A stretch of 27,409 nt of DNA from Penicillus capitatus (Eukaryota > Plantae > Chlorophyta), in the NCBI GenBank assembly GCA_965649825.1, contig OZ287703.1, positions 588,213 to 615,621 on the forward strand, in the 5' to 3' direction. The notes beneath the pieces are model-generated. The model made no database searches. It saw only the letters and a list, made by a program, of their open reading frames with translations, and was not told where the DNA came from. Below are positions 1 through 22,008 of the stretch, piece by piece (position 1 is the first letter of the stretch; each line of letters starts with the position of its first letter). A program made the translations under genes and the position numbers.

Positions 1-3000
1 ATGCGGCATGGAAGCCATCGTCGTCCATGTCCTCAGTCGTTCCGCCCAAGTTTTCTAAGACTTGACGATCCAGCTGTTCGATCAGAGCATCGACTCTTTC
101 AGAACTATCGGGAAAAACAGGGAACCGTGAGTCATTGTCTTGAATGTATGCCATTGATGCAAGGAATCCTTTGCGATAACCGCGAGAGCCATTCAGAAAT
201 CTGCGTCTCGATCTCAGTCCACTTCCCCGAGTTGGACGATTCAGCAAGCGATTCGGGAGAGTGCTCTGATTGAATCCGAAGAGAATGGCCACATCGTGTC
301 CGGAGAACTTCGGGCATGCGAAAGACAATTCGACATCGTTGGATGTCGAAAGGGTATTCAAATGACGATGCAGCTCTCCGCTGTGGCATCTGAGATCCTC
401 TAGAATGGGACGCACTGTGATCATCAAGAGATTTTCTGCACGACAGACATTGAAAATCGCATCCACAGCAGCTTTCACTTTGCCAGTCGTCCACCCAGAC
501 AACACACCTGCGTACTTGCCCAGCAAATAACGGCCACGCAATTGAATGAGCTCATCGAATGCAGCGTCTTGCACTTTGTCGCTATCTTTTCCATCCGTCT
601 GAAAGGCCATTCTCATGGAGAGGTCATCCGAAAAGATGTGAAGATTGGAGAGTCCTTTCAAAATCGCGCATCTCTCATCCACCTCTTTGCACGAACAAGC
701 TTCATACAATGCCACAAGAGCATTGTTCCACACGGAATTCTCTTTGCAGCTGGAGAGCATATCCAGCAGATAGCGAATCTCATCTTTCATGGTTGGCCGA
801 TATGAGATGATCGCATCCAATTGCTTCCACTGATAATTGAAAGACTCCAGATAAGCATGATCACATTCGGCATGCTGTACATCTGTAAGAGAAAGATCCA
901 TTGCATTGATGCAGTTCATCTTTTCAGATTCGAGATCATGGAGCTCTTTTGATGTGACAGTCACTTCGTTTTGTGTTTCTTCTGCCCTGAATTCGGATAG
1001 CTTTGTCCTGAGGTTGTTTAACTTGACCTGATATGTGGCCACTGAGATTTCGTTAAGCTCGTGGTGATTCATGCGATCGAGTGCCTGGACAGCCTTGATG
1101 GCTTCCTGCATAATTGCCGTCAGCGGTTGCGGTCGGTCTTTGGCATTCTTCCACAGATCTTTGAATTGCTGCTTCAACTCAGTAATCTGCTGCGCAACGA
1201 TATCTCTCTTGCGGCTCATATCTTGGTCCCGCGAATATGCCGAGCTTCCTTCGCCCGCACTAGGTTGGGATGTGCCCGGATCGTGGCCGGCTCCACTTCT
1301 TTGCAGATCTTCATATTTTGCCTTCAGTTTGCCAAAAAGGTTGTCCAGATCGTTCTTCTGGAGCCAGTCCTGTTCAATCGACAGTTTCTTAGTCAGAGCA
1401 TTCAGATCCTCCTGCCAGGTATCGAAATCCGTGACGGGTTTCGTGCTGTCAAACTTCATGTCTTCTCCTTCGATGATCAAGAGACCAGTGAAATAGGCAA
1501 CGGTTTTTGAGACAAGCACACAAATTTCGTTAACTGTCTCCCAGATTCTGGAACCTCTGGGTTTGAAGTATCTCGTCGAGTACCGTATCAGAAAATCTTT
1601 GAGCTTCAAGACTGGCAAAATGAAGTCCAGAGCAACGAAGATGTCTCCGAACTTATCCTCTGCCTGTTGCAGAAGACCCTTGAGACGCAATGTCAGCTCC
1701 TGGACTGGACAATCCTTCAGTTTGTCCACAAGTAGCTTAAAACTGAAAGCAAACGATGCAAATTCACGTTCCGATGACAGCAGTCTCTTCTCGATGTCTT
1801 TCAGTTTATCCTCGATGTTCTGCTCCATCATCTCGATCTCTGTCTGGTCAAAGGGCTTGGCTGCCGCTGCAAGCATCTTTCGAGATTTTCTGCTTAGGCG
1901 ATTTGATTCTGTCTCAGTTTCTCTTATGCTATTATCAACACGCAAGAGATGACGCGTGAGTGTATCTTCCGACTCTTCAAAGAGGAGACTGATTGCATCC
2001 TTGTACGCCACCATCTGATTCTTCAGGTCCGTGGTGAACTCGTCGACTCTCTTGTGATCAGATGCGGCAGAAGCATTGTTGAGGTGGGGAAGAGTGGTCA
2101 ACGTGTAGAGACAGGCTACCAGAGTGGATCCCAGTCTCGATAGGCGACCATCAAAAGAGCAATCTCTCGTTAACTGGCATTCTTTCAACGATATGGCATA
2201 GTCCATCTCACGAGATTTCTTCCACTGCTCAAGCCATCTCTGAGCTGATGAGCTGCCCGGATTCCACGTGTAGTTCATCACTTTGATCGACTTCTTCTTG
2301 CTGTTCTCAGTCGGTTTCTCATCTTCGATGATGACAAGAGAGACAAGATCCGAGAGGGAACTGCAAGAGCTGAGTTCACCGACCAAGAGTGCTGCCCTTG
2401 GACAGCCACCATCAGCCATATCCACATCGAGATTTTCATCACAGCACTTCACCAGTCTATAAGGTATGCTGCTCTTGATCGTTTGGTTAAACAGAACTGC
2501 CCAGACCATGCAGAGTTCGCTCTTGCAGATGCTTTCTTTGGACTCTTTGAGTCGCATGCGCAGTCGACATCGAGTGGTAACATCGATTTTGCTGAGCGCC
2601 GGATGATTAGATTGCACTTCTTTTAAAAGATACTCCAGAATGCTGCCATGGAGCTTGACGGCATCATCGAATTCGCTCTGCACAATGAATGCGCAATCCG
2701 ATGACCTCAACAGATCGTCAAACCTCTCCATTGGTGTCCGCGGCGCCATCTGACAGGAAGCTTCTTCCCCGTGAGGCACGGCAGTCGATGTCGATGGTCC
2801 ACCTTCTTCAGAGCTTTCCGTCCTTCTGCCTTTCGTGACTGCATCAAAGACTCCTTTTACCATACTGAAGCATTGAGCAATGGCGCCTTTGCCTTCAGAC
2901 GGTTCCTGTGGTTTTGGATTCAACAAATCATCCAACAAGGAGCGCATGTCTGACATGATTCTCAGACGACTAAACAATCTCTGAATCTCCAGTACTTCAT

Positions 3001-6000
3001 CTGCAGCGATGCTCTCTTGATGGAAGAGCATCAGCCTCTCGTCCAGAAGGAGAGATACCTTGAAGTCGAGTGCAGAAAAGACATACACCATGGCAATTCT
3101 GTTGGCTTCTTCCTTCGGCTTTCCTGTCTCTTTCAGCAGTCTCAGAATCGATCCCCTGAGCTTGTCCCTATCTATCTCTGCGAAGGTGTCAGCCAGTCTC
3201 TTGTGGAGATTGAATTTCAATGCCTTGTCTTGGCAATTTTGCTGATGTTCGCCCAAATCCTCTGCTTTCTTGGCAAAGTCGTCGCCTTCAAGGGGATGGA
3301 AGTAATGCACCAGATGTCGCACGGAAGAGAGTCTTTCTATGAGTTCTTGAATGTCTTCCAGATCTTGACTGCAACAACCGACATCGCTGTCCAGAACACA
3401 ACTCAGTGTCTTGAGGACGAGACTCAGATCCAGGACAAATGCTTTTCTCTGCTTCCAGTCGACAAACGAGGAGTTGTTGACAAATCGCTTGACCATTCTC
3501 TCCAACTTTTCCGGTGTTTGCTTGAAAAGTGCCAGTGTCTTGTTTTCTGTCGTACTGAATTCTTTCAGATAATCAGCTAAGGGGCCTCCCTTCTCGCTGC
3601 AGAACTGAGAGAATTCTGATGCACTGTGAACTGTTCTGGAGATCTGTTCTGCATGCGCCATCTCATGAGGGTACAGATGCGCAAAGAGCTTTTCAAGAAA
3701 CAGAGCCAATGCCTTAGAAAAGCTGCCCTTGTTCTCAATACTCATCACTTGCCTCAACAGGTGTTTTGCGCAAGTGTGAACGAATGGAGCGAAAACAGAT
3801 CGCAGCACTCTGCTCTCTTTCTGGAATGGTGTCAGGGTATCTCTCTTGCCGTCGATGACAGAATAGAATCTGTGCATCGGAAGCAATGTCCTTTCTTTGC
3901 AGGTTTCATGCATGGCTGTCCGCAACTCCTCCAGATCGTCGTCTGGCTCAACAATGGCAGTGTAGACTCTCCATAATCCCCATACAGTAGCACTGAACAG
4001 CGGCTCTCCTCTCTTCAGCCAGGTACGGGCGACAGACAGGGCCTGCTCAAGCATCCTGAAACTTATTTTGGAGTCTTGCATGATGGTGATTTGAGACGTC
4101 TGCGCCAGTTTCCGTGCCTTAACATGAAAAGCGACGGCGAGAATGGCGGCCACAATGCCGCCTTCGACGGATCCGAGCGCTTCAGAGGCAATCTCGACCG
4201 TTTCATGGCTCTCCAGTGAGCGTAAGTCTGGATCAAGGACATCTCCATCAATCTCGGGCAACCAGATCTTGATCATTCTGTTCAGCAGCGGGTTGGAGAG
4301 TCCGAAGGTGTTGATCTTCTTCCTGTCCGCCGTCGCAAAGATGCGGGTGGTAAGATGGATGCCGGCACCAGGCTTGAGCTCCTCGCCCTCCGAGTGCTCG
4401 TAGAGGCTGAGAAACGGAGTCTCTTCGAACAGGGACAGCAGTCGCTCGATCACGTCCGGCGATGCTGCATTGATGTTGTCGAAGAGGATGAACGACCCTG
4501 ACTTCAGCGCCTTGATAAGATCAGACTCCACAAACTTAAAAACAGTCGATGAAGAATCGAGCTCAATCGATGACAATGTGTTCTTAAGTGCAGCTGTCTT
4601 CTTCGCCAACGCTTCCTGCATCTCCGATCCACACTCTTCAAGGATTCCAAGCACCAACTCCACATTTTCAATGACTTCATGCATTTCGTCAATCGAGAGA
4701 TTTGATTTGTTTTTGGAATAAAGCATCTTCATGGCCTCATAGAAAGCAGCACGGTTGATCTGAAGAATCTCTCCCGAGTGCCCGAGTCCAAATCTCGCAA
4801 CATCATCTCTCAGCTCAGGTATAGTTTTCTTCAGTTCCTTGGTAATGTCGCTTGTGGTAAAGGGAAGCCACTGTCCGATGAGATCGGCGACTTCGAAATC
4901 CCGATGAAGTGACAAGACAAGCAGAGGGATGCCTGTGATGGCAGCCAGCTCCTTCACGAGGGATGTCTTCTTGGAGCAGGTGGGTCCTTCGAGCAGCACT
5001 GCCCTCTGGGACTGGCTGGCCGTTGCCAACAGCTCCAGCTGCCGGATCGTGTTTACTGTGTGCACCAACGATCCCTGAGACGCACGAGCTTCGTCCTTCT
5101 CCATGTAGACATTTCCAATTCGCAGAAGATTGCCCACAGACAAGTCGATGGATGGATGGTCTCCCTGATCCAATTCCATCTGAGGTGGCTCAACAACTTC
5201 GTCGATGACGTCTTGGATCTGCCCGGCGGCTAATCGATTGTCGAATCGATGTTTGAACACCAGCTGAAGAGCCTTGCGGATGACGCTTAGGATAACTGAG
5301 TTCTGATCAAATGCCTGCTCGGTCTCTTTGCTTCCATCGCATACCATCACTGTGTGATGCGATATCTGCGTCTCGATATTCCCGGTCACAATATCCCGGA
5401 CAGCCGCCAGGTCTCTCAGGTTAAACTTGTGCTTTCGATTGGCTCCCGGAATCTGTCCACTCTCCACTAACTGTTCGACCCTCTTGTAAACCTCAAAGAT
5501 GTGCTGCAGATGATCTTCAGTGATCAGCTTCTTCGAACTGAGTGTTTGAAACTGTTTTTCCAGAATCTGTGTAAGATCTGTGTCTGTATAGGATTCCATT
5601 TGAACAGCTGTAAAGATATTCTTAATGGATCTCGACAGCTTGGCTCTGCCGCCTCCCTGCGCTGCCGGATTCATTGTTGCAAAAATCCGTATACCTTTGA
5701 GGGAAAGGCGACCTGAATCCAGTTTGCCTGGAATGGAAAATCCTTCTGTAGCGGCAGATCCATCGAGCAATGGGACAAGAGATTCCAGCACTTGCGCAGG
5801 CAGCAGATTGATTTCGTCTAACAGGATCCATTTCTGAGATTTGAGAGCCTTTAGCAGCGTGCCATCTCTCCATTTGAATTCTCTTCGGTCGTCGACATAA
5901 AGTGGCATGACAGCGCCATAAAACTGCTCGATGGAGGTGTCGCCCGAGCAGTTGATGCGTTCCAGATCCGTTCCAAGAAACTGGGCAACCTGAGTAATGA

Positions 6001-9000
6001 CAGCAGTCTTGCCTATTCCGGGAGCTCCTTCGAGCAACAACGGCGAATTTGTGCAGACAGATGCAAAAACGCGAGCCATGTTCTCAACGACCGAATCCGT
6101 CGGACACAGAAACAGATCGGGCAACTCAGATTCTTCAGATGCCTCTGCTGCATTCGACATCATGCTCAAGGAGAGGCCGATGCCTTTCAATGAAACCACT
6201 CGGCCGCCCTGATCTTCACTCTCCTCCACAGTAAACGGATTGTCTTCCACAGGAAGTGCATGATCGGGTTTCAGATCCTCAAATGCGTTTGGAAAGAACT
6301 TCTGAAGCACCTCGTTCTGGATATCAGTTGGATAGCCTGCCAGATAGAAGAACTTAGCTCCCAGCATGCATCTCTTCTGGAGGCTGAGGTTCCTTGGATG
6401 CTGTGTTACAAACGTGATCCATCTCAGAATCCGTCTGAAGTCTTCACAGGGATGCTCGGGGTGAGCTCCGACGATTTCGGATCGGATGTCTTTTACCTGG
6501 CTCATGAGATATGGCAAAGAGTCCATTTCGCTGTAATGGAGCTCCTGTCGAAACTTCTCCTCTGCGATGGACATGATGTCAGACGTCTGATAGACAGGCA
6601 CTCGAATCTGCGTCAGTCTGCTCATTGTGGCAGCGCTGAGCTGCGGCTTCTTGTTCGCCGAGTCCAAATGGGAAGTGGCTATGAAGCAATAGCCTTGATT
6701 GGGGATGTTCATTTCGGCAGCGATGCTGTCTGAGAACGACACGTCTTCCGGAATGCTGAACGTCGGATCCACTTCCAGAGCACTGTTCAGTCTTTCAGTC
6801 ACTGCCTGAGCACAGAGATCGTAGTCTTCCACGACAAACGCATGCTCCATGGTAATGGCCTTGACGAACGGACCGTCCCTGAACATGAAGCAGGGTTTGC
6901 TGTTTTTCACATCTGTCGAACGAATGAACAGTCTCAGTTGCTTCAGCCGATGCACCATTCTCTGCATGGCAGCAGGTATGCTCTCGCCCATGATGTTATT
7001 CGCCAATTCTGGTATCTTTGCGACGACATCATCTATGAGTGTCAGGTGATCATCTTCTGTTAGCTTGGCACTGTTCTCTCTCGGTGAGTCTAGATCTTTG
7101 TTGTGATCATCAGGATCTGCAGATGTGGATGCTTGGATGCCATGTCCTTCCCTCTGTGCGTTCGAGTCTTCTGTATCTCCATCGTCATCCACATCAGTCT
7201 CGCCGTTGACACTGCCATCCGATGAGCGATCGAATTCGAATTCCGGGTATTCGTTTTCGTATTCGCCATCAGAGGCTGACTGCTCGTCTTCGGCATCGGT
7301 GCCAATCGGGTCTGACAGATCTTCGTACCCAGGATCGAATTCTTCTCCATGCAATTTGCATTTGAAGCGCAGCACTCTTCTGTACAAACTCTGGCGAAGC
7401 CGGCGAAGATACGTCCTTCCTCTCACTGTCTCTCCCGAACGTGGTTGAACTTCCAGCTCGTTGTCTAGATAAGAGAAAATGAAGTCCCCCGTAGATGCCA
7501 GACTGCTCAGCACGTCCACGAAGGACACCAGCTGCACTTGGCCAATCAGGTCCGTTGCCTCAGACTGCGACGTCAAGTGGACGCGCTGCACGCTCTTTGT
7601 CATCCCTGACAGCTCCAGCCACGTCTTGATGAGTTCTGTCTTGAATGCAGATTCTCCGTACAACAACACGGGTTCGTTGGCCTTCATGGCAAAGGCAAGA
7701 TCAATCAGCTTGTGCTGGAAGACAGCAGGAGGTCCATGTCGCGAACGGCTGCCTCTCCACAGAGGACTGTTGTCGAGTTTGAATCCAGGGAAGTGGACGT
7801 GAAGGTGTCCCCGGCAGAAACGCACCCCATTTTCCTCCTGCACGATGTTCTTCTTTGTCAATGCCTCTGCCTCAACCTCTTCACTGGCTCCAAAGCTCGA
7901 TTCAACGAGCCTCAGCAGTTTGGCTGTCTCTTCCTCTGTGATGGCTTGCGGAGCCAGCAATGACATGGTCACACTGGTCCAAGTCACTCTTTGCCTTTCG
8001 TCTTTCAGGAGTTTGTATCTTCTCACGATCTTGATGATATCTCGCATTGTTAGCTGAAATCCTTCAGCAGGAGATAGATGATATAACTTGGCCAGCCCAT
8101 CGACATTAAGCTGCCCATCAAAACCGGCATATCTTTCGCCATGAAATCGCTTGGCGAGGATTTCCATAAACTCATCTCGTGGGAAGTCTTCGATGTCAAC
8201 TGTCAAGAATCGATTCCGTACAGTGACCGGCAAGAGTTTTCGACCATCTCTCCCTCCTCGAGATGGATTCTGAGTGGCGAAGAAGCGGAAGTTTGGATGG
8301 ACACTCAATCGCATGTTGCTTCCAGGGATCTGCACAGTACAGTTTCCTTCCAAGAAAGGCATCAGCGCCGATGTCACAGCCACTGGAGCGAGATTGAATT
8401 CATCGGAGATGAACCAGTGACCGTTCTCCATTGCCTGCACAAGGATGCCTTTCTGAAAAACGAAGCCATCGTTTGCTGGCATCCAGCTTCCAAAGTAGTC
8501 CTGCACTGTTGTCGTGTCGCTGTTACTCAACAGCAGCACTCTGTTGGTTACACCAGCAAATCGACGCAGACCATAGACGAGTGCCGTCTTGCCGACAGCA
8601 GGTTTTCCTTCCAGCAGAACGGGCTTGTTCGTAAGGGCACCCAAAAGAAGTGCCTGTGCATGGCGCTTTCTGGAAGATGTCAGGACCAGATCGCCATCGA
8701 TCGTAAAATCATCAAGCAGTCCTAGTGTATCCAGCACGTTGCTCGGGCACTCCATCTTGCAACAGAGGGAATCCCTGGCAAGAGGGTCCCTTATCTGAGC
8801 AGCGAAGGTTGACATCATTGCGCAATGAAGGGCCCTCTGATCTCCAAGTCTTGGCATTTGGACCATCAGCATCGTCGCCATGTCGATCAACGTGACAAAA
8901 TCTCTGAAGGATGTCAGCATGTGCCGGTTCTCTGCAAAGAAATCTCTGATTTTGAAGCAGTAAGTGTAGATGATTGGGGCAGCCGCTGCAAGACGGTCCA

Positions 9001-12000
9001 GGGGCAAACAGCACCTTAACATGGACTTCAAAGCAGAGAAGAATTCTTCGACGGGCATTCTTGCGGGATCATCGATGTGGACGACAACGAAACGATTGAA
9101 CAGTGCAGCTGTGAGCTCACTGGATGCGCTATCCTGTCCTCTGCCTGCAATGCCTTTTGGAGTGAAGGTCGCCACAATCTGAAAGCCTCTTGCCGGTCCT
9201 GGCACATTAGATACTGTTCCGTCGGCAAGGATGCGAGAATGCAATGGTTTCCTGTCTCCTTTTTCTGTCAGGCACAGCACTTTGGGAGATTCCAGCACAG
9301 GGTTCATTCTCTCCTGCAGAACGGACTCGGCTTGGCCAATGTTGTCGACGATGCAGACACTGCCGTCTTTAAAGGCTCTGGTCAGTGGACCATCTCTCCA
9401 TTCGACTTTCCGTTGAGCGCCAATGATGTCTCCTGGCAGATACTCTCCAAGCATCATTGCCGGTTCACTCTCGCGCGTCAGCGTGACGTGCTCGTACTGA
9501 TTGCCCAAGAGGAAAGCCACTGCCTTTCCGATGCACGTCTTGCCGGATCCGGCATTTCCCGATATCAGAATGGACTGTTCGATGCGGATGGCTTCGGCAA
9601 TGACATCCAGGTTCTCGCACATGTGATTGTCGAGTGCAATCGGCATTTCTGGAACGGAACAAGCAGACCATGACACGATGCCGAGATCGCCGCCAAACGT
9701 GTTCATAAAGATGTCGAGAACCATGTCCCGTGCTTCCTTGAGTCTGAATCGCATGCAGTATCCTTCTGCGCCAATGCGTCCCAATGCTATGAGCATCTTC
9801 GTCTGCAGAACGTCTTCTTTCATGGCGTCTGCTAGCCACTTCGCCAGCCAAGATTCAGAGAACGAGGAATAGATGCCGAAGGTGTTCATGAATTCAGGAC
9901 TCTGAATCATCTTCAGAACGGCAATGTGCGCATCAGCACAAACATTGAAAGCTTTCATCACGTCTTCATTCGGAAACTGATGGAACGGGAAATGTCTTTG
10001 CCAGAATTGGCTGACAAGAAGGATGTCACTCGCGCGACATGGACTCTTGATCTTTGAATACTTCTCAAAGAGACGTTCCAGTGGAGTCTCGCCTGAGTGG
10101 ATGGTTAGGTTGTGCCGATTGATGACGTTCTGAACCAATTGGCGTCCCTCTCCGCGGAATCGACAGCCATAGATCAGCCATGCGTACTCCCCTAGCTTCT
10201 CTTCCGCATGAACAAGGCGTTCTTCTGCCAGGATCATGTCTGTCCACATGAGAAGCTCCCGATTGGTGATCGTGGCGTAGCTGCCCTTTTCGGCGCATCC
10301 TTTGAGCTCTTCTCTGAGATTAGAATGAAAACCTGTCATAAGTTGAGACAGTTTTTGAACCCGGTCGACATCGTCGTCCTCCTTGATGCCTTGGTGCATT
10401 TTCTTTGCCACGATCGTTCTCCATTCCTCTGTGGGCAGTTCTTTGAAATGCATCACAGAGAACTGCGACAGAAAGGCATCGCTGATCCGTTCTCTCTTGC
10501 CAGCTTGCCACGGGTTTTGAGATGCAAACAGTCGAAAGTTGGGATGTCTCGGAATGATCTCGGTAGGGGACACGGCAGAGCTTCGGTCAGTAATCGCTAT
10601 CTTTCCCGATTCTATGGCATCGATCACGACCTTCAGAGCGCCCTCTTCGGCCAGATTCATTTCGTCCAGCAGAACCCAGAAACCTTTCTTGAAGCTCTCG
10701 GCAAAGGGCTGAAGCTTCCGGATCGTTTCTCCTTCTCTGTTAATGACAACCTTTGCCAGAAAGTCTTCAGGAGTAAGATTAGAAGACATGTTGATTCGAA
10801 CGAATATCACTTCCTTGCGGCGACACACCTCTGTGAGCGTCGCTGTCTTCCCCACGCCGGTGGATCCGACCAGCAGCACGGGGCTACCATCCTCGGCCAC
10901 CTCTTCTATCTTGGCTATATTCTCTTCTGTAGTGGGGGTCAGTATCATGGGGCAGATCGGTTCGGTGTCTTTCTCCCTTGAATGTGGTACCGTATGTGTC
11001 TGGAGGACAGTTCTTCGCAGATGACTGCTCTTTAGTGTGAGATCGGAGTGCCCGAATGTTTTGACCATTCTCTGCAAATCTGCCAAGGGCGCATTCTCTG
11101 ACGTGATGTTTTGGCCTTGTGGAAACTTGGCGGAAAAGAAGGCAGGAACAGTCGTCATGTACTCGATCGACTGAGCTAGTTTATCTTCCTTCTGTGACTG
11201 AGACTTGCCATCGATCAGAAGAGAGACAAGCTCTTCGACTTTTGCAAGAACACTGCTTGCGTCATTTCTTTGCAGCAACCCGAAGAGCCTGTCAAGCATG
11301 GCAGTGAGTGACGTTTTCAGAGGATCATCTGTCGAGTCAGCAGGGACATCGATTACATACTGCACCAGCCAATCGAAGAGCTTGACGTCCTTCAAGGATT
11401 CCGTATCAGCTGCTGTGCTGTGTGCGATCGTGAGCCATTCACTGAGCTGATGAACTGCCTTGTCTGCCAAGACACGGACAAAAGATCTGAAATCTTCCGA
11501 CGGGATGTCGCACAGCAGCATCTGGTCCACGTTGGACATCAGTGCAGCGATTGGATACTGGCAATCTTTTAGATCAAGGGCACAGGCCAAACGGATTACA
11601 GCTAGTACAGCATCACTGGAAACGCCGGCGTCTCCAGGGGAAGGACACAGCAATGCCTTACACACTTTTGGCCAATCAACGGATCCTTTCGCGATGTTGC
11701 GAACTTCACAACGACCAGTGTCTGATTGCAGAAGAACGTCGAGGGACATCAGCAGCGGTGCACTATTGTTGCTCTTCATGTTCTCGCAGAGTTTAAAAAG
11801 ACGCGTCACATCATCCACATTAAGATTCCTGCACCACTTGTGCAACCATCTGGCTAGGCAATCTTCTTCAGAAAGCACAACAAACGCACGAGGGTTCACG
11901 TGAGACACGCACAGGAGACAGGAAAAAATAGAGAAGGATGCTTTTCTGTGACAGTAATTCGAAATTGTTTTGAAATCCGAAGACACACTGAAAGGAAAGT

Positions 12001-13324
12001 CTTCTGCATCGATCGATGCCATATTGTCTCGCAGGGTCAGATAGAAAGAAAACAGCGATTCGACAAAGGCCTTGTTAAGATCAGAGACCTGCACAAATTT
12101 TGTCTCTTCTGCAAAGAACAGGGATAGAAAGTGCAAACGCTCACAGATCCACTGTTCTGGCTTTTTATCTAGGATGTCAGAATTCAGAAGGCACTGACAG
12201 CAAATGTCTAGAAAGCAGGGATAGGCAGTGGACAGTGTGTTTTCAGCACAGAAGGTAACAAACTCACAGATTTTTTCAAACAGCACATCAGACAGAGCAA
12301 AATGCACAACAGGTGATAAAAACAGAAACTCGATTGTGTGAAAGAGAAGGATACTATTATCGGATGCCCCGACGAGCAATCCGTCAAGAAAAAGAGTGGC
12401 GATGTCCATTTCAATGCCATTCAATACCATCTCTAGAATTCCGTTGAGCTGAGCTTTTGTGGAAGAAACGTCAGGTCGGTAGAGATCGATGAGATTCGAA
12501 ACGAATGCATCGAATGCATTTCTAGATGTCCTTGCCGTTATGGCAGCCGTCAGAATTTTCTGAACGTGCTCACTAGTGTCACATCTCCCTTTCTGCGCGA
12601 CATCGAATCCACCACCATCCAAGGTCACTTCTGATGGTCCATCCATACGCGTGTCTTCTTGCTGAGAACTGTCACTGGAATCTGGAGTCATGCCAGCGGC
12701 GACAAAAGGATCGAAAACCAGCGATAGCAGTTCCTGAGAAGCAAGGATATCTCCCACAATCTGAGGGCCGTTCTTAATCTTTCCATGTATCTCCTTGCCG
12801 GTGCCCAATTCGCCACAAACGATGTGTTCCAAGAGGCCAAGGACGGCATCGATATCATTGCCCAAGACGTCTTTCAGAGTCAGCATTCCGAGCAGAATCT
12901 CAGCACTGGGGCCATCATCCTCACTCTGCAGCTTCATTCTCACTCTTTTCTTTATTGCCACCTCTTGTACTGACAACTTCGAATCGTCGTATTCTCTTTT
13001 GCGAAGGAGAATGTCGTAGACGCTGCATGCTTGCGATGTGGGCACTTTCTGCACGAACCAGTTCAGGATCTGTGCCAAAGGACCACAGGCGGCCGTCTTC
13101 GCTTTGAGCACTCTGACTGCATGCGCTTGGACGATGCAGTGGAAGAATGCGGCAGTGCCGTTCTTGGTCAGATCACTTTCCGTCGTTTCGATGGAACCGC
13201 GACGCGTGATCGCATCAACGGCTAGACGGATATCCTGAACTGCCGAGTCTTCTCTCTCGTCCAATGCGCGTTTTAGCGCGTCTTGGAGCATCGAAAGGTT
13301 AACCCACTTTGATGTCGCTTCCAT
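1..13324 (-). CDS. Giant midasin/Rea1-like protein with six tandem AAA+ (MoxR/dynein-related) modules; 3'-partial, >=4,441 aa, continues past the left edge
   Basis: The minus frame with codon starts at positions =1 mod 3 is open from 13507 (in-frame TAA at 13510-13508) to the window edge, and the first ATG is at 13324 (MEATSKWVNLSML...). No ORF in this frame is listed in the track, as expected for a frame with no stop. Walker A-type motifs: GSTGVGKT 10867, GNAGSGKT 9559, GKPAVGKT 8608, GESAFKT 7657, GAPGIGKT 6028, GPTCSKKT 4987. Each is followed by MoxR-clade signatures such as RINCSGDTSIEQFYG, FKWRDGTLLKAL, WILLDEIN, HPNFRLFASQNP and RIFATMNP. About 820 aa of helical N-terminal region precede the ring and >=1,300 aa of helical/coiled-coil linker follow it. 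No MIDAS/vWA domain lies inside the window. The start could extend by an upstream exon. Orthology to MDN1 is not established. Confidence 0.92.
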   Translation of the reverse strand, partial: MEATSKWVNLSMLQDALKRALDEREDSAVQDIRLAVDAITRRGSIETTESDLTKNGTAAFFHCIVQAHAVRVLKAKTAACGPLAQILNWFVQKVPTSQACSVYDILLRKREYDDSKLSVQEVAIKKRVRMKLQSEDDGPSAEILLGMLTLKDVLGNDIDAVLGLLEHIVCGELGTGKEIHGKIKNGPQIVGDILASQELLSLVFDPFVAAGMTPDSSDSSQQEDTRMDGPSEVTLDGGGFDVAQKGRCDTSEHVQKILTAAITARTSRNAFDAFVSNLIDLYRPDVSSTKAQLNGILEMVLNGIEMDIATLFLDGLLVGASDNSILLFHTIEFLFLSPVVHFALSDVLFEKICEFVTFCAENTLSTAYPCFLDICCQCLLNSDILDKKPEQWICERLHFLSLFFAEETKFVQVSDLNKAFVESLFSFYLTLRDNMASIDAEDFPFSVSSDFKTISNYCHRKASFSIFSCLLCVSHVNPRAFVVLSEEDCLARWLHKWCRNLNVDDVTRLFKLCENMKSNNSAPLLMSLDVLLQSDTGRCEVRNIAKGSVDWPKVCKALLCPSPGDAGVSSDAVLAVIRLACALDLKDCQYPIAALMSNVDQMLLCDIPSEDFRSFVRVLADKAVHQLSEWLTIAHSTAADTESLKDVKLFDWLVQYVIDVPADSTDDPLKTSLTAMLDRLFGLLQRNDASSVLAKVEELVSLLIDGKSQSQKEDKLAQSIEYMTTVPAFFSAKFPQGQNITSENAPLADLQRMVKTFGHSDLTLKSSHLRRTVLQTHTVPHSREKDTEPICPMILTPTTEENIAKIEEVAEDGSPVLLVGSTGVGKTATLTEVCRRKEVIFVRINMSSNLTPEDFLAKVVINREGETIRKLQPFAESFKKGFWVLLDEMNLAEEGALKVVIDAIESGKIAITDRSSAVSPTEIIPRHPNFRLFASQNPWQAGKRERISDAFLSQFSVMHFKELPTEEWRTIVAKKMHQGIKEDDDVDRVQKLSQLMTGFHSNLREELKGCAEKGSYATITNRELLMWTDMILAEERLVHAEEKLGEYAWLIYGCRFRGEGRQLVQNVINRHNLTIHSGETPLERLFEKYSKIKSPCRASDILLVSQFWQRHFPFHQFPNEDVMKAFNVCADAHIAVLKMIQSPEFMNTFGIYSSFSESWLAKWLADAMKEDVLQTKMLIALGRIGAEGYCMRFRLKEARDMVLDIFMNTFGGDLGIVSWSACSVPEMPIALDNHMCENLDVIAEAIRIEQSILISGNAGSGKTCIGKAVAFLLGNQYEHVTLTRESEPAMMLGEYLPGDIIGAQRKVEWRDGPLTRAFKDGSVCIVDNIGQAESVLQERMNPVLESPKVLCLTEKGDRKPLHSRILADGTVSNVPGPARGFQIVATFTPKGIAGRGQDSASSELTAALFNRFVVVHIDDPARMPVEEFFSALKSMLRCCLPLDRLAAAAPIIYTYCFKIRDFFAENRHMLTSFRDFVTLIDMATMLMVQMPRLGDQRALHCAMMSTFAAQIRDPLARDSLCCKMECPSNVLDTLGLLDDFTIDGDLVLTSSRKRHAQALLLGALTNKPVLLEGKPAVGKTALVYGLRRFAGVTNRVLLLSNSDTTTVQDYFGSWMPANDGFVFQKGILVQAMENGHWFISDEFNLAPVAVTSALMPFLEGNCTVQIPGSNMRLSVHPNFRFFATQNPSRGGRDGRKLLPVTVRNRFLTVDIEDFPRDEFMEILAKRFHGERYAGFDGQLNVDGLAKLYHLSPAEGFQLTMRDIIKIVRRYKLLKDERQRVTWTSVTMSLLAPQAITEEETAKLLRLVESSFGASEEVEAEALTKKNIVQEENGVRFCRGHLHVHFPGFKLDNSPLWRGSRSRHGPPAVFQHKLIDLAFAMKANEPVLLYGESAFKTELIKTWLELSGMTKSVQRVHLTSQSEATDLIGQVQLVSFVDVLSSLASTGDFIFSYLDNELEVQPRSGETVRGRTYLRRLRQSLYRRVLRFKCKLHGEEFDPGYEDLSDPIGTDAEDEQSASDGEYENEYPEFEFDRSSDGSVNGETDVDDDGDTEDSNAQREGHGIQASTSADPDDHNKDLDSPRENSAKLTEDDHLTLIDDVVAKIPELANNIMGESIPAAMQRMVHRLKQLRLFIRSTDVKNSKPCFMFRDGPFVKAITMEHAFVVEDYDLCAQAVTERLNSALEVDPTFSIPEDVSFSDSIAAEMNIPNQGYCFIATSHLDSANKKPQLSAATMSRLTQIRVPVYQTSDIMSIAEEKFRQELHYSEMDSLPYLMSQVKDIRSEIVGAHPEHPCEDFRRILRWITFVTQHPRNLSLQKRCMLGAKFFYLAGYPTDIQNEVLQKFFPNAFEDLKPDHALPVEDNPFTVEESEDQGGRVVSLKGIGLSLSMMSNAAEASEESELPDLFLCPTDSVVENMARVFASVCTNSPLLLEGAPGIGKTAVITQVAQFLGTDLERINCSGDTSIEQFYGAVMPLYVDDRREFKWRDGTLLKALKSQKWILLDEINLLPAQVLESLVPLLDGSAATEGFSIPGKLDSGRLSLKGIRIFATMNPAAQGGGRAKLSRSIKNIFTAVQMESYTDTDLTQILEKQFQTLSSKKLITEDHLQHIFEVYKRVEQLVESGQIPGANRKHKFNLRDLAAVRDIVTGNIETQISHHTVMVCDGSKETEQAFDQNSVILSVIRKALQLVFKHRFDNRLAAGQIQDVIDEVVEPPQMELDQGDHPSIDLSVGNLLRIGNVYMEKDEARASQGSLVHTVNTIRQLELLATASQSQRAVLLEGPTCSKKTSLVKELAAITGIPLLVLSLHRDFEVADLIGQWLPFTTSDITKELKKTIPELRDDVARFGLGHSGEILQINRAAFYEAMKMLYSKNKSNLSIDEMHEVIENVELVLGILEECGSEMQEALAKKTAALKNTLSSIELDSSSTVFKFVESDLIKALKSGSFILFDNINAASPDVIERLLSLFEETPFLSLYEHSEGEELKPGAGIHLTTRIFATADRKKINTFGLSNPLLNRMIKIWLPEIDGDVLDPDLRSLESHETVEIASEALGSVEGGIVAAILAVAFHVKARKLAQTSQITIMQDSKISFRMLEQALSVARTWLKRGEPLFSATVWGLWRVYTAIVEPDDDLEELRTAMHETCKERTLLPMHRFYSVIDGKRDTLTPFQKESRVLRSVFAPFVHTCAKHLLRQVMSIENKGSFSKALALFLEKLFAHLYPHEMAHAEQISRTVHSASEFSQFCSEKGGPLADYLKEFSTTENKTLALFKQTPEKLERMVKRFVNNSSFVDWKQRKAFVLDLSLVLKTLSCVLDSDVGCCSQDLEDIQELIERLSSVRHLVHYFHPLEGDDFAKKAEDLGEHQQNCQDKALKFNLHKRLADTFAEIDRDKLRGSILRLLKETGKPKEEANRIAMVYVFSALDFKVSLLLDERLMLFHQESIAADEVLEIQRLFSRLRIMSDMRSLLDDLLNPKPQEPSEGKGAIAQCFSMVKGVFDAVTKGRRTESSEEGGPSTSTAVPHGEEASCQMAPRTPMERFDDLLRSSDCAFIVQSEFDDAVKLHGSILEYLLKEVQSNHPALSKIDVTTRCRLRMRLKESKESICKSELCMVWAVLFNQTIKSSIPYRLVKCCDENLDVDMADGGCPRAALLVGELSSCSSLSDLVSLVIIEDEKPTENSKKKSIKVMNYTWNPGSSSAQRWLEQWKKSREMDYAISLKECQLTRDCSFDGRLSRLGSTLVACLYTLTTLPHLNNASAASDHKRVDEFTTDLKNQMVAYKDAISLLFEESEDTLTRHLLRVDNSIRETETESNRLSRKSRKMLAAAAKPFDQTEIEMMEQNIEDKLKDIEKRLLSSEREFASFAFSFKLLVDKLKDCPVQELTLRLKGLLQQAEDKFGDIFVALDFILPVLKLKDFLIRYSTRYFKPRGSRIWETVNEICVLVSKTVAYFTGLLIIEGEDMKFDSTKPVTDFDTWQEDLNALTKKLSIEQDWLQKNDLDNLFGKLKAKYEDLQRSGAGHDPGTSQPSAGEGSSAYSRDQDMSRKRDIVAQQITELKQQFKDLWKNAKDRPQPLTAIMQEAIKAVQALDRMNHHELNEISVATYQVKLNNLRTKLSEFRAEETQNEVTVTSKELHDLESEKMNCINAMDLSLTDVQHAECDHAYLESFNYQWKQLDAIISYRPTMKDEIRYLLDMLSSCKENSVWNNALVALYEACSCKEVDERCAILKGLSNLHIFSDDLSMRMAFQTDGKDSDKVQDAAFDELIQLRGRYLLGKYAGVLSGWTTGKVKAAVDAIFNVCRAENLLMITVRPILEDLRCHSGELHRHLNTLSTSNDVELSFACPKFSGHDVAILFGFNQSTLPNRLLNRPTRGSGLRSRRRFLNGSRGYRKGFLASMAYIQDNDSRFPVFPDSSERVDALIEQLDRQVLENLGGTTEDMDDDGFHAA

Positions 13325-14296
13325 CGTTGCCTGGAGACACAGCGACGCATTGGGCAGTCCGTCGCCGAACGAGGATTCTTCGTAGGATTGAGATTTTTGG
13401 ATGCCGCTCTCGTCGTTGACGAAAAAGGCGAAGGCGCGAAATGTTGCAAGACATCCGAACGACCGCGTGCGCTTGAACGAGACTGTAAGGATCGTTGTTT
13501 TGTGTTCTTACTTTGCAGGAGGTATTTTTCTTGAAGTCGCGAGAGGATCGTTGCTTCCGAACGAATGAATAGTCAACGACCCTTGGAAGAAGATATTCCG
13601 TGCTGGGCACGATGCGTCGCGTCAGGATTTAACGTTGAAAATGACGCGACATGGTGGATGTATCAAAGTAAACGAGATGCTTCGACGGTCGACGCCACTT
13701 CTTGCGGAACACTACGGTCTTCTATCTCCTCTATCTCGCCTTACCTTTTGTTATGTTCATGTCCAGCATGCATTCGGTCTACTCCTTCCTCCTGGAGTAA
13801 TCTCCCATGAGGCGAACATAAGTGAACACGTGAAGATTTCTGTATCGCTCTGATTTCAGAGACAGAAGTTCATCTCCTTTCACAAAAAGACTAGCCGTTA
13901 TGAAGAGACAAGTTCAACGGAACTCTTTTTTCATGCGCATTGCTGGTAAGGTAGATGGTGTGTATATTAAGGCGTCCATAGTTGGTTGGACCTGCAAGGT
14001 GCATACATTCAGTAAGAAGTCTGAAGACTGCGTGGCAATCGCTCTTAATCTTCTATAAGATGGAGGCTCTTTACTTGCACTGTTATGAAATGCACATAGT
14101 ATGTGTGCTATCAAATAGGGTCGGGACGTCCAGATACGGTGGGTGTCTCTTCATGACCACGTATGTACTCACTGAATTCAACATGCGCATGAAATGCAAT
14201 GCATGACGATAATGCCCCATTTTGGCCGCCCTACTGTTCACAGACGTTTCTTCCTCTGTTCTTTCTGGACGTGTTGTTGTGGTTGTCGACACAAGT
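13325..14296. promoter_or_regulatory. Divergent (head-to-head) intergenic region between the giant AAA gene and NOG1; presumed bidirectional promoter/5' UTRs
   Basis: Inferred from gene orientation only. No convincing coding frame and no specific motif was identified. It could hide 5' exons of the giant gene (GTAAG donor-like sites on the minus strand at 13511 and 13744). Confidence 0.4.
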
Positions 14297-17388: not shown

Positions 17389-17893
17389 CTATGACTGTTT
17401 GGCTGTAATGTGTTTGGCAATGAAGTTTTGGAGATCGGATTTGGTTTGACTCAGATTGGCTTCGCCCGAGATCTTGATTCCGCTCTTGGACTCCAATGAG
17501 ATCATCAGCTTCGCATCGAATGCCGTCGGAAAGGCATTGGGATTGCAGATCACTTCAAGCGCAGCGATATCGTCCACATTACCCTCTGGATTCTCATAGC
17601 TGTACCGCATCAGATCCCATCTCTGCGGCTTCTCTGCTGCCTGTTTTTCCTTAAACGTTTGCAACAGTCCATTAAAAGAGCGCCCCAAGTTGCGCGCCTC
17701 ATCTGTGCTGAAGGGCAATTCCACTGTCGATTCGCCCAGATGCAATACCAGTGGCGTCTCTGCGTCCGAGGAGATCCATAACGATCCAGTTCGATAAGGC
17801 GTATCATAAAGCACCTCGTGATAGACATCGAAGACGCCATGGACGACTCGGCCGAGGATGACAGAGAAGCATACGTCTAGCAGCGATCTTCAT
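17389..17893 (-). CDS. Probable plastid-targeted homolog of a conserved cyanobacterial hypothetical protein, ~149 aa; complement join(17815..17893,17389..17759)
   Basis: Exon 1, MKIAARRMLLCHPRPSRPWRLRCLSR, is basic and acid-free, like a transit peptide. A 55-nt GT-AG intron (17760-17814) joins it in frame to ETPLVLHLGESTVELPFSTDEARNL...LEVICNPNAFPTAFDAKLMISL...ISGEANLSQTKSDLQNFI. From memory this matches small cyanobacterial proteins with LEVFCNPNIWPTPFAAKVL...TTEAEL. Start codon uncertain (17893 or 17872). Confidence 0.78.
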
Positions 17894-18540: not shown

Positions 18541-18756
18541 AGTGAATCTGTGGAGTTTCTGTATCCGCGTTTTATCATGGCAGCCTTTGGATCAGACAGT
18601 GAGACATGCGTCATGCCATCGATAAAACGAGGCGGTAAGAAAGTGGATGGCATCGTCGCGTAATTTGACAGATTTTTTCATGGGACCCTTTTGAAAACGA
18701 CGCGTCATTCTTTATGTATCCACGTGGATGATGGACACTGTGTAAGAACATGAGGA

Positions 18757-21700: not shown

Positions 21701-21930
21701 GTTTCATCGCAATTGACCAGAAATCCGTGAAAGCAATCGATTCCTTCACTCTCAGTCGTGATCCCGCCTTTGAGTCGACCTCGGCTCAGTTGCCGCCCCT
21801 CGTCGTCGCACAGCACTGCTTGGCGATTGGGCATTACTTTGAGAAACCCATCGTGGTATGTCTTGTGCTTTTTTGTAAGGTGACGCGAGTAAAGAACGCG
21901 AAAACACTGAAGGACGTCGCTGCGCGTCAT
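18757..21930 (-). CDS. ZGRF1: ZGRF1-like protein: N-terminal DUF2439 plus Upf1/DNA2-NAM7-like SF1B helicase, 911 aa, 10 exons
   Basis: DUF2439 signature FRVLYSRHLTKKHKTYHDGFL. Helicase motifs: LNDDQ, IHGPFGTGKS, CAHTNKAVD, LDEACQ, GDPCQLP, LRTQYRCHPDI, ATVDSFQGMEKDVIILS, RLNVALTRAR. Introns (minus): 21443-21494, 20857-20901, 20469-20512, 20189-20241, 19638-19694, 19444-19487, 19218-19262, 19085-19127 and 18958-19012 (GC-AG). The spliced length of 2,736 nt is a multiple of 3. The track's 21933 start is a TTG; the ATG is at 21930. Confidence 0.9.
18958..19012 (-). other. Non-canonical GC-AG intron (55 nt) in the ZGRF1-like gene
   Basis: CAG|GCAAGA...TTTTATGCAG|GGT. Only this splice rebuilds the conserved helicase motif VDSFQ|GMEKDVIILS. 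Confidence 0.88.
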
Positions 21931-22008
21931 CAAGGGCGAACGTTGTCAGGCGCCGTGTGAAACTGTCGATGATGTGACAGCCTTTAACAAGACCGACAGA
22001 CATCATGA

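What the first reader, a model, noticed from the sequence alone, without database searches (positions are those of the whole stretch)
4260..10870. Alternating active/dead AAA ring (1,3,5 intact; 2,4,6 degenerate) with matching arginine-finger losses
Seen: Walker B is DE in modules 1 (LLDEMN), 3 (ISDEFN) and 5 (LLDEIN), but DN in 2 (IVDNIG), ED in 4 (VVEDYD) and DN in 6 (LFDNIN). Walker A is corrupted in 4 (GESAFKT) and 6 (GPTCSKKT). The arginine-finger motif keeps Arg in 2 (LFNRF), 3 (VRNRF), 4 (TMSRL) and 6 (LLNRM), but loses it in 1 (FLSQF) and 5 (IKNIF). Established: in dynein-like rings the finger of module n+1 completes the site of module n, and canonical Mdn1 has AAA2-5 competent with AAA1 and AAA6 degenerate. 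Inference: the fingers serving live sites 1, 3 and 5 are kept and those serving dead sites 4 and 6 are lost. This implies a pseudo-three-fold motor with three catalytic interfaces, a different mechanochemical design from midasin, possibly built from an active+inactive module pair.
Basis: partly seen in the sequence, partly recalled or inferred. Interest (0 to 1): 0.85.

Follow-up and report, generated by a model that had tools for sequence, protein, structure and literature searches.

The report
Midasin paralog with alternating ATPase sites
The window holds the first 4,441 residues of a roughly 8,000-residue relative of the ribosome-assembly motor midasin; it belongs to an undescribed, widely scattered eukaryotic family whose six-module ATPase ring keeps catalytic residues only in modules 1, 3 and 5, a conserved design unlike midasin's that is so far known only from sequence.

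Summary
All 14 quoted motifs lie in one intron-less minus-strand reading frame (13324→2, running off the window). Alignment to solved Rea1/Mdn1, the published Mdn1 motif definitions and an AlphaFold model all place them at the true Walker A, Walker B, sensor-1 and arginine-finger positions. The pattern is not drift. It is invariant in 10 orthologs down to 40% identity and is the hallmark of a family of at least 39 clusters at 50% identity: Walker B is DE/DN/DE/ED/DE/DN and finger 5 is never Arg (0/39). This family separates from canonical midasins with 100/100 bootstrap and includes rotifer, brown-alga and green-alga members. Canonical midasins, including those of a green alga and an oomycete, keep AAA2–5 active. 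The "dead" module cores are under purifying selection as strong as the live ones. Orthologs show the full protein is about 8,200 aa, with HYDIN/CFAP65-type Ig domains and two VWA/MIDAS domains in the tail. The three-stroke mechanism remains an inference from sequence.

The parts
2..13324 (-). Intron-less coding sequence for residues 1-4441 (from Met62 of the open frame) of a giant midasin-like AAA+ protein. The C-terminal ~45% lies beyond the window edge.
   Evidence: Open frame. Orthologs start at the same Met. Downstream pieces of 5708, 5869 and 4388 aa in the orthologous loci. dN/dS 0.23 against L001.
10931..13324 (-). N-terminal region (~800 aa) of unknown fold, longer than midasin's N-terminal domain.
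   Evidence: No Pfam hit and no PDB sequence match. dN/dS 0.31.
10418..10930 (-). AAA1 large domain, with a complete cis motif set: Walker A GSTGVGKT (10844-10867), Walker B LLDEMN (10655-10672), sensor 1 FASQNP (10511-10528). Finger position FLSQF (10460-10474) has Gln in place of Arg.
9038..9622 (-). AAA2 large domain: intact P-loop GNAGSGKT (9536-9559), Walker B IVDNIG with no catalytic Glu (9335-9352), sensor 1 Thr in VATFTP (9158-9175), finger LFNRF (9089-9103), which serves site 1.
   Evidence: DN in 23/24 family members.
8153..8674 (-). AAA3 large domain, complete: GKPAVGKT (8585-8608), ISDEFN (8393-8410), FATQNP (8264-8281), finger VRNRF (8207-8221), which serves site 2.
   Evidence: Best match to midasin AAA3.
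6563..7720 (-). AAA4 large domain, degenerate: P-loop GESAFKT is one residue short with Phe for Gly (7637-7657), Walker B VVEDYD (6818-6835), sensor 1 His in IATSHL (6665-6682), finger TMSRL (6614-6628), which serves site 3. It contains a ~185-aa acidic, fast-evolving insert (6923-7477).
5558..6094 (-). AAA5 large domain, with a complete cis motif set: GAPGIGKT (6005-6028), LLDEIN (5807-5824), FATMNP (5666-5683). Finger position IKNIF (5612-5626) has Ile in place of Arg; it would serve the dead site 4.
   Evidence: Finger is never Arg in 39/39.
4223..5050 (-). AAA6 large domain, degenerate: GPTCSKKT (4964-4987), LFDNIN (4469-4486), sensor 1 Asp in FATADR (4322-4339), finger LLNRM (4274-4288), which serves site 5. 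It has a ~110-aa helical insert (4538-4867).
2..4222 (-). Post-ring region (AAA6 lid plus a helical region of >1,400 aa), continuing beyond the window into Ig-like and VWA domains.
   Evidence: No Pfam or PDB match. The model is confident only for the first ~390 residues, which are all helical. Tail domains are seen in the ortholog-clade protein P0159.

Best explanation
The window encodes the N-terminal 55% of a member of a deep, uncharacterised paralog family of midasin (MDN1/Rea1). It is a single polypeptide of about 8,200 residues made of an ~800-aa N-terminal region, six tandem dynein-type (AAA_5) modules forming one ring, a long helical region, HYDIN/CFAP65-type Ig-like domains and two C-terminal VWA domains with DxSxS MIDAS motifs.

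Shown: complete sets of catalytic motifs (Walker A, Walker B DE, sensor-1 Asn, and the trans-acting Arg finger of the next module) exist only for sites 1, 3 and 5.
- Site 2 keeps the P-loop and its finger but has DN, so it is predicted to bind ATP without hydrolysing it, as dynein and RNF213 AAA2 do.
- Site 4 has a shortened P-loop with Phe for Gly, ED, His at sensor 1 and no finger, so it is predicted to be empty.
- Site 6 has DN, as in midasin. In this clade it also has a Gly-to-Lys P-loop, Asp at sensor 1 and Gln at the finger.
- The pattern is conserved family-wide, and the degenerate modules are as strongly constrained as the active ones.

Inferred: the ring works as three rigid pairs (2+3, 4+5, 6+1) hinged at three hydrolytic interfaces (1|2, 3|4, 5|6), an F1-ATPase-like alternation of catalytic and non-catalytic sites within one chain. 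By analogy with midasin, the VWA/MIDAS tail would hold a protein ligand, and ATP-driven ring changes would pull or remodel it in a larger assembly. The target is unknown; a ciliary or flagellar assembly is a weak guess based on the Ig-domain type.

By parsimony the ancestor shared with midasin had AAA1-5 active and AAA6 DN. Midasin then lost AAA1, and this family lost AAA2 and AAA4.
For: - One open frame, six AAA_5 modules, best PDB relatives Mdn1/Rea1 at E ~1e-98.
- Motif positions verified against solved midasin and the published definitions and on an AF2 model whose best fold matches are Rea1, Mdn1 and dynein.
- Ortholog table invariant.
- Family statistics over 39 representatives: Walker B DE 19/20, DN 23/24, DE 25/26, ED 28/33 (DE 0), DE 38/39, DN 30/35 (DE 0). 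Finger Arg 19/21, 19/19, 24/26, 33/33, 0/39, 34/34.
- Each module of distant members matches its own-numbered module best.
- Family and canonical midasins split 100/100, with the rotifer proteins inside the family clade.
- Canonical midasins, including a chlorophyte and an oomycete, show AAA2-5 active (literature).
- dN/dS of the cores of modules 2, 4 and 6 is 0.05-0.11, against 0.09-0.16 for modules 1, 3 and 5.
- Tail domains: HYDIN/CFA65 Ig 36.9 bits, Ig_CFAP65_4th 29 bits, VWA 41.5 bits in two stretches, VWA_2 35.9 bits in P0159. Several VWA domains in P0128. Faint VWA hits on all three orthologous downstream products.
- Precedents: ATP held as structural glue in a non-hydrolytic AAA2 (RNF213). 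Alternating active/inactive rings that still work: linked Msp1 dimers and the Pex1/Pex6 trimer of dimers.
Against: - Everything about activity is inferred from motifs. There is no ATPase, nucleotide-occupancy or whole-ring structural evidence.
- DN or ED sites can retain nucleotide binding (Rea1 AAA1 and AAA6 hold nucleotide) and might hydrolyse slowly.
- Sensor 2 and lid residues were not analysed.
- Finger 1 is retained in most of the family, so the neat finger/site matching holds fully only in the window's clade.
- The midasin-like pulling mechanism rests on the ring and VWA domains alone. The N-terminal and post-ring regions show no sequence or detectable fold similarity to midasin's N-terminal domain or linker.
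- The VWA tail is not in the window and was seen in relatives only.
- Co-occurrence of this paralog with a canonical MDN1 in one and the same genome was not shown directly (searches missed).
Confidence: 0.65

Rival explanations
1. It is simply this lineage's MDN1 ortholog whose motifs have drifted. The pattern would then be the lineage's normal midasin state.
For: The best solved relatives are midasins. UniRef automatically names the rotifer members 'Midasin'. The AAA6 DN and the VWA tail are shared with midasin.
Against: Bit scores fall from 500-3245 within the family to about 400 for all canonical midasins. The split has 100/100 bootstrap, and the rotifer members group with algal and protist family members, not with animal midasins. 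Canonical MDN1 with the AAA2-5 pattern exists in a chlorophyte and an oomycete, while Bryopsis and Ectocarpus carry the family type. The size (~8,200 against ~4,900 aa) and tail architecture differ. There is no similarity outside the ring.
Confidence: 0.04
2. The ring is a regulated conformational switch and not a three-stroke motor. Only one or two of sites 1, 3 and 5 drive work. The others, together with the ATP-binding site 2, act as regulators, as in dynein (AAA1 drives, AAA3/4 regulate) or RNF213.
For: In every characterised single-chain ring the motif-competent sites are functionally unequal. Site 2 keeps its P-loop and finger. The large module-specific inserts in AAA4 and AAA6 resemble the autoinhibitory inserts of Rea1 AAA2.
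Against: Nothing in the sequence distinguishes sites 1, 3 and 5. All three are near-invariant in Walker A, Walker B, sensor 1 and trans finger across the family.
Confidence: 0.3
3. The ring arose by triplication of an active+inactive two-module unit, so the alternation is primitive.
For: Profile-profile scores show an odd/even periodicity. Even modules match even canonical modules best (2->AAA4, 6->AAA2/AAA6) and odd modules match odd ones.
Against: The same periodicity exists within canonical midasin, whose AAA2 and AAA4 are active. Modules 3, 4 and 5 correspond positionally to AAA3, 4 and 5. Related single-module ATPases (NorQ, CbbQ, which match the P-loop regions) are ordinary ATPases, so by parsimony activity is ancestral for every module. 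Part of the even-module similarity reflects shared long inserts (numbers of aligned columns).
Confidence: 0.08
4. The degenerate modules are decaying remnants in a gene that is losing function, or the locus is a pseudogene or retro-copy, given that it lacks the intron its orthologs carry.
For: The window copy lacks the AAA5 P-loop intron that all orthologs have.
Against: There are 13.3 kb without a stop codon. dN/dS is 0.23 overall and 0.05-0.11 in the 'dead' cores. The degenerate motifs are themselves invariant. The copy sits in conserved synteny with NOG1, the helicase and the F-box genes, as in L001.
Confidence: 0.01

Closest known systems
Midasin (MDN1 / Rea1), the pre-60S ribosome remodelling AAA+ ATPase
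   Same: Single chain with six AAA_5 modules. Modules 3-6 are colinear with AAA3-6. AAA_lid_7 is present. AAA6 has Walker B DN. There is a long helical region after the ring and C-terminal VWA/MIDAS domains. Midasin is the best sequence and fold match.
   Different: Motif-complete sites are 1, 3 and 5 instead of 2-5. AAA1 is complete, whereas midasin's has ED. AAA2 has DN. AAA4 has a broken P-loop. Finger 5 is absent. The protein is ~8,200 against ~4,900 aa, has an ~800-aa N-terminal region, HYDIN/CFAP65-type Ig domains and two or more VWA domains. It forms a separate clade (100/100). There is no detectable similarity outside the ring.
Dynein heavy chain motor domain
   Same: Single-chain ring of six AAA modules from the same clade. 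It mixes hydrolytic, ATP-binding-only (AAA2) and dead sites. The AF2 model of AAA5-6 superposes on dynein with TM about 0.57.
   Different: No stalk or microtubule-binding domain, no N-terminal linker or DHC Pfam domains. Dynein's active sites are AAA1, 3 and 4, and AAA5 and AAA6 are dead; they do not alternate.
RNF213 (mysterin)
   Same: Giant single-chain protein with a dynein-like six-AAA core and few active sites. Its AAA2 holds ATP as structural glue without hydrolysing it, which is the model for site 2 here.
   Different: RNF213's active sites are the adjacent AAA3 and AAA4. It has an E3/RING module and no VWA. No sequence match was found.
F1-ATPase alpha3beta3 and Pex1/Pex6 (functional analogues, not homologous assemblies)
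   Same: A six-member P-loop ring in which two kinds of member alternate. In F1 (own knowledge) catalytic sites alternate with non-catalytic nucleotide sites. Pex1/Pex6 is a trimer of dimers. Engineered Msp1 WT/E-to-Q linked dimers still hydrolyse ATP.
   Different: Those rings are built from separate subunits. Here the alternation lies within one polypeptide, and the three non-catalytic sites differ from one another.
VWA8 (eukaryotic AAA_5 + VWA protein)
   Same: Dynein-type AAA modules plus a VWA domain in one chain (own knowledge; discussed together with midasin in the paper read).
   Different: VWA8 is about 1,900 aa and mitochondrial (own knowledge). No reference sequence was on hand, so no direct comparison was made. 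The window protein's nearest relatives by every search were midasins.

Membership tests
Midasin / MDN1 / Rea1 (ortholog) | Six tandem dynein-type AAA modules in one polypeptide | tested here: met
   Six AAA_5 stretches, E 1.3e-85. Six modules also in all relatives.
Midasin / MDN1 / Rea1 (ortholog) | AAA2-AAA5 carry Walker A, Walker B DE and Arg fingers; AAA1 and AAA6 lack Walker B | tested here: not met
   Here DE is in modules 1, 3 and 5 only. AAA2 has DN, AAA4 has ED plus a broken P-loop, and finger 5 is absent. Canonical pattern verified in 13 midasins and in the literature. Only the AAA6 DN is shared.
Midasin / MDN1 / Rea1 (ortholog) | Groups with MDN1 orthologs in phylogeny | tested here: not met
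   NJ tree of AAA3+AAA5: family and canonical midasins separate in 100/100 bootstraps, with the rotifer members in the family clade. Bit-score gap.
Midasin / MDN1 / Rea1 (ortholog) | C-terminal MIDAS (VWA) domain after a D/E-rich region | tested here: inconclusive
   The window ends before the tail. The ortholog-clade protein P0159 has two VWA domains with DxSxS motifs and a short acidic stretch. P0128 has several VWA domains. So VWA is present in relatives, but in a different number and context.
Midasin / MDN1 / Rea1 (ortholog) | Midasin-type N-terminal domain and helical linker (stem, middle, top) | tested here: inconclusive
   No sequence match of residues 62-859 or 3100-4502 to any PDB chain. 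The AF2 model of the post-ring region has low confidence (pLDDT 52.7) and gave no significant Foldseek hit.
Midasin / MDN1 / Rea1 (ortholog) | Removes Ytm1 and Rsa4 from pre-60S particles | not testable with these tools
   Functional assay needed.
Midasin superfamily (broad sense: single-chain AAA_5 x6 ring + VWA) | Ring homologous to midasin's, with positional correspondence of modules | tested here: met
   Modules 3, 4 and 5 match AAA3, 4 and 5 best, and module 6 matches AAA2 then AAA6. AAA_lid_7 scores 26.5 bits against a cut-off of 22.7. Foldseek top hit is Rea1 6hyp at E 4.9e-19.
Dynein heavy chain | Coiled-coil stalk with a microtubule-binding domain between AAA4 and AAA5; N-terminal linker; DHC Pfam domains | tested here: not met
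   Only partial P-loop-region hits to AAA_7 and AAA_6. No DHC_N, stalk or microtubule-binding families. The AAA4-AAA5 spacing is filled by an acidic insert and a lid.
RNF213 | AAA3 and AAA4 active, with a C-terminal E3/RING module | tested here: not met
   No RNF213 chain among the PDB sequence hits. No RING in the window or the relatives' tails. The site pattern differs.
VWA8 | ~1,900-aa protein with AAA_5 modules and one C-terminal VWA domain | not tested
The size and tail architecture are clearly different.
MoxR / CbbQ / NorQ single-module ATPases | One AAA_5 module per chain, assembling as homohexamers | tested here: not met
   They match only individual P-loop regions (E 1e-9 to 1e-5). 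Here six modules are fused in one chain.

The most novel reading that the evidence does not exclude
This family is a third, previously unrecognised ancient lineage of single-chain hexa-AAA+ mechanoenzymes beside dynein and midasin. It would run on an F1-like alternation of three hydrolytic and three non-hydrolytic interfaces, and would use a tail of Ig-like plus MIDAS domains to remodel a large, possibly ciliary or flagellar, assembly in the scattered eukaryotes that retain it.
Probability: 0.35. Interest if true: 0.8.

Novelty: new variant of a known kind. Interest (0 to 1): 0.66.

Why it matters
Single-chain AAA+ rings (dynein, midasin, RNF213) are the model systems for asking how unequal ATP sites cooperate. 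All known ones cluster their active sites. A conserved natural ring in which motif-complete and motif-deficient sites strictly alternate, with the dead modules under strong selection and the trans-acting finger lost exactly where its target site died, is a natural experiment. It bears on whether such rings need neighbouring active sites (sequential hand-over) or can work as a trimer of rigid pairs. It also shows that midasin has a deep, giant, unannotated paralog in rotifers, brown and green algae and uncultured protists. Databases currently label these proteins 'Midasin' or leave them unnamed, so transferring the 60S-biogenesis annotation to them is probably wrong.

Tried and rejected
(1) The ORF listing first suggested a fragmented, intron-rich region. 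That was an artefact, because ORFs running off the window are not listed.

(2) I looked for a canonical MDN1 from the same organism by checking the sample and coverage of long ENA contigs carrying canonical hits (P0118, P0148). They came from other samples, so co-occurrence in one genome is not shown.

(3) The listing of cluster members gave no names or accessions for the close orthologs. The taxon could only be approximated through NOG1.

(4) My first hhalign script misparsed the output and was redone.

(5) The post-ring and N-terminal regions have no PDB sequence match. The AF2 model of residues 3096-4295 was poor (pLDDT 52.7) and Foldseek found nothing significant, so whether a midasin-like linker exists is open.

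(6) Pfam found nothing in the 1,300-1,400 residues just beyond the window edge in L001 and L003. The Ig and VWA domains lie further downstream.

(7) Literature searches for a described midasin paralog, or for an alternating single-chain ring, found none. That is absence in the searched library only.

(8) Rfam and tandem-repeat scans of the window were empty.

(9) Rejected readings: pseudogene or retro-copy, lineage-specific MDN1 ortholog, and dynein, RNF213 or MoxR membership (see the rival explanations and membership tests).

Full report
WHAT IS IN THE WINDOW. That frame is open for 4,502 codons, from 13507 to 2, and runs off the left edge of the window. It was missing from the ORF list only because ORFs that leave the window are not listed. 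Orthologous gene calls begin at its Met62 (window 13324), so the window holds residues 1-4441 of the protein, without any intron. Pfam finds six AAA_5 (dynein-related) stretches (E 1.3e-85) and a midasin lid (AAA_lid_7). The only strong solved relatives are S. pombe Mdn1 and S. cerevisiae Rea1 (E ~1e-98), with modules 3, 4, 5 and 6 aligning colinearly to AAA3, 4, 5 and 6. The rest of the window carries a divergently oriented NOG1 gene, an SF1 helicase, an F-box/LRR gene and a GST. The order matches the orthologous locus L001.

ARE THE MOTIFS CORRECTLY ASSIGNED? Yes.
- Kawashima et al. 2016 define the Mdn1 finger as a motif with two Arg in R2, R3, R4 and R6 and one in R5, the second Arg being the critical one.
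- Direct phmmer alignments to solved midasin pair AAA4's VVEDYD with LLDEIS, IATSHL with FATMNP and TMSRL with LRNRF.
- They pair AAA6's GPTCSKKT with GETGTGKT, FDNIN with LDEVN, ATADR with ATMNP and LLNRM with LRNRF.
- AAA4's GESAFKT needs a one-residue gap against every one of Rea1's six P-loops and places Phe at the Gly of GK[ST].
- An AlphaFold2 model of AAA5-AAA6 built on a family alignment (pLDDT 82, pTM 0.76) puts each Walker A after beta1, each Walker B at the end of beta3, sensor 1 after beta4, and the finger position at the end of alpha4. Its best fold matches are Rea1, Mdn1 and dynein.
- The direction of action (the finger of module n+1 completes site n) and the canonical pattern (AAA2-5 functional, AAA1 and AAA6 without Walker B) are stated in the Rea1 structure paper and in Kawashima et al.. 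The 13 canonical midasins I tabulated reproduce them.

IS IT MORE THAN CHANCE? The pattern is invariant in ten orthologs at 40-84% identity, and the degenerate motifs themselves are invariant (IVDNIG, VVEDYD, LFDNIN, GE[ST]xFKT, GxTCS[KR]KT). Sensor 1 follows the same alternation: Asn in modules 1, 3 and 5, and Thr, His and Asp in modules 2, 4 and 6. An exhaustive HMMER search of 1.84 billion representatives returned at least 39 family clusters (50% identity) among the best 150 hits. They are recognisable because each of their modules matches the same-numbered module of the window protein best. Over these 39:
- Walker B is DE 19/20, DN 23/24, DE 25/26, ED 28/33 (never DE), DE 38/39 and DN 30/35 (never DE) for modules 1 to 6.
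- Sensor 1 is N 21/21, mostly T, N 26/26, H 30/33, N 38/39 and N 22/35.
- The finger is Arg in 19/21, 19/19, 24/26, 33/33, 0/39 and 34/34.
Between the window and its 80%-identical ortholog, dN/dS is 0.05-0.11 in the cores of modules 2, 4 and 6 and 0.09-0.16 in modules 1, 3 and 5. It is 0.39 in the acidic insert of AAA4 and 0.23 overall. The 'dead' modules are therefore maintained parts, not decay.

ORTHOLOG OR PARALOG OF MIDASIN? Paralog.
- Scores drop from 1,400-3,245 bits (orthologs) and 500-1,041 bits (distant members, including proteins from Adineta and Bryopsis) to about 400 bits for every canonical midasin. Brachionus and Ectocarpus members appeared in the second search.
- A neighbour-joining tree of AAA3+AAA5 separates family and canonical midasins in 100/100 bootstraps. 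It places the rotifer proteins with the algal and protist family members, not with animal midasins.
- A chlorophyte (Parachlorella) and an oomycete (Phytophthora) midasin have the canonical pattern, while Bryopsis (a chlorophyte) and Ectocarpus (a stramenopile) proteins have the family pattern.
- I could not show both genes in one assembled genome.

FULL ARCHITECTURE. In three orthologous loci from long-read metagenome assemblies the gene is split only by short GT..AG introns. One of these lies inside the Gly codon of the AAA5 P-loop and is absent from the window. The pieces add up to about 8,100-8,350 residues. The tail of a representative of the window's clade (P0159) contains HYDIN/CFA65-type Ig-like domains (36.9 bits against a cut-off of 25.5), a CFAP65 Ig domain (29 against 27) and two VWA domains (VWA 41.5 against 23.8; VWA_2 35.9 against 27). 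By eye these VWA domains carry DxSxS MIDAS motifs. A distant member (P0128) has several VWA domains. The N-terminal ~800 residues and the post-ring region show no similarity to anything solved. A model of the post-ring region was confident only for its first ~390 helical residues and gave no significant fold match. Its NOG1 is closest to green-algal NOG1 (63%), slightly ahead of plants, fungi and animals (57-61%). The closest named homolog of the giant protein itself is from Bryopsis. A chlorophyte affiliation is therefore a weak guess.

HOW IT PROBABLY WORKS. Shown: only sites 1, 3 and 5 have the full set of P-loop, DE, sensor-1 Asn and incoming Arg finger (from modules 2, 4 and 6).
- Site 2 has an intact P-loop and an incoming finger but DN and Thr.
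- Site 4 has a shortened P-loop, ED, His and no incoming finger anywhere in the family.
- Site 6 has DN, as in midasin. In the window's clade it additionally has a Gly-to-Lys P-loop, Asp at sensor 1 and Gln or His at finger 1.
Inferred: three hydrolytic interfaces (1|2, 3|4, 5|6) alternate with three static ones. The 2|3 interface is perhaps glued by permanently bound ATP, as in RNF213 AAA2. The 4|5 interface is empty and 6|1 is non-catalytic. The ring would then behave as three rigid pairs hinged at three active sites, an F1-like alternation inside one chain. Heteromeric and engineered AAA+ rings made as trimers of dimers function. By analogy with midasin, whose MIDAS domain binds the substrate and docks on the ring, the VWA tail would hold a ligand that ring movements pull on. 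The Ig-domain type hints weakly at ciliary or flagellar assemblies. A serious rival (confidence about 0.3) is that the three complete sites are functionally unequal and the ring is a regulated switch rather than a three-stroke motor.

ORIGIN OF THE PATTERN. Profile-profile comparison shows that modules 3, 4 and 5 correspond to midasin AAA3, 4 and 5. It also shows an odd/even periodicity (2->AAA4, 6->AAA2/AAA6, 1->AAA3/AAA5). The same periodicity exists inside canonical midasin, whose AAA2 and AAA4 are active. Together with the shared DN of AAA6, parsimony suggests an ancestor with AAA1-5 active. Midasin then lost AAA1, and this family lost AAA2 and AAA4 together with finger 5. The window's clade later lost finger 1.

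VERDICT. The comparison with midasin is correct. The mechanistic reading is plausible but untested, and two details need correction: the generality of the finger matching, and the pair origin. I found no description of this family or of an alternating single-chain ring in the searchable literature. I rate it a new variant of a known kind (a midasin-superfamily mechanoenzyme), of above-average interest.

Noticed in passing
window ~6005-6028 (minus strand); L001 17279-17323; L002 ~17446-17493; L003 ~14833-14880: All orthologs carry a 50-60 nt GTAAGC...CAG intron in phase 1 of the Gly codon of the AAA5 P-loop (GIG|KT). The window's gene lacks it and is intron-less over 13.3 kb, which points to intron loss in this species.
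   Followed up: partly
window 6923-7477 (minus strand), protein index 2011-2195: AAA4 carries a ~185-residue acidic (D/E-rich) insert between its P-loop and Walker B. It evolves much faster (dN/dS 0.39) than the module core (0.05-0.09). AAA6 has a ~110-residue helical insert at the equivalent place (window 4538-4867).
   Followed up: partly
L001 and L002 (both ENA ERZ26696514): Two family members, 84% and 60% identical to the window protein, come from one sample at similar coverage (173x and 162x) but have different neighbouring genes. They are either two paralogs in one genome or two related species.
   Followed up: no
canonical midasins P0018, P0025, P0049, P0093, P0106, P0108, P0112: Within canonical midasin the modules show an odd/even similarity (AAA2~AAA4~AAA6 and AAA1~AAA3~AAA5 by hhalign score). 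This hints at an ancient two-module repeat in the whole superfamily, though part of it reflects shared long inserts in the even modules.
   Followed up: partly
window 14222-15861 (+ strand): The NOG1 (nucleolar GTPase) gene is the divergent neighbour. Exon 1 starts at a Met near 14297 (MVLYNFK...), followed by a short intron, and exon 2 lies within the ORF at 14755-15861. It is 95% identical to the L001 neighbour. About 970 bp separate it from the giant gene's start, a likely shared promoter region.
   Followed up: partly
P0215 (7,557 aa): Another giant protein has AAA_5-like modules only at residues ~4065-6331, so its ring lies in the C-terminal half. Its module order fits neither midasin nor this family. 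It may be yet another single-chain ring architecture.
   Followed up: no
window 18611-26565 (minus strand): SF1 helicase fragments (AAA_11; 19655-20742), an F-box/LRR gene (22009-23750) and a GST-like gene (25987-26565) appear as several short ORFs, presumably split by short introns. The helicase and F-box/LRR genes lie in the same order as in L001.
   Followed up: partly
family table: Gln or His at finger 1, Asp at sensor 1 of module 6 and the 'CSKKT' P-loop occur together only in the window's clade. Most other family members keep Arg plus Asn, and some have a canonical GxxCSGKT P-loop. Site 6 may therefore still bind nucleotide in the wider family and has decayed stepwise.
   Followed up: partly
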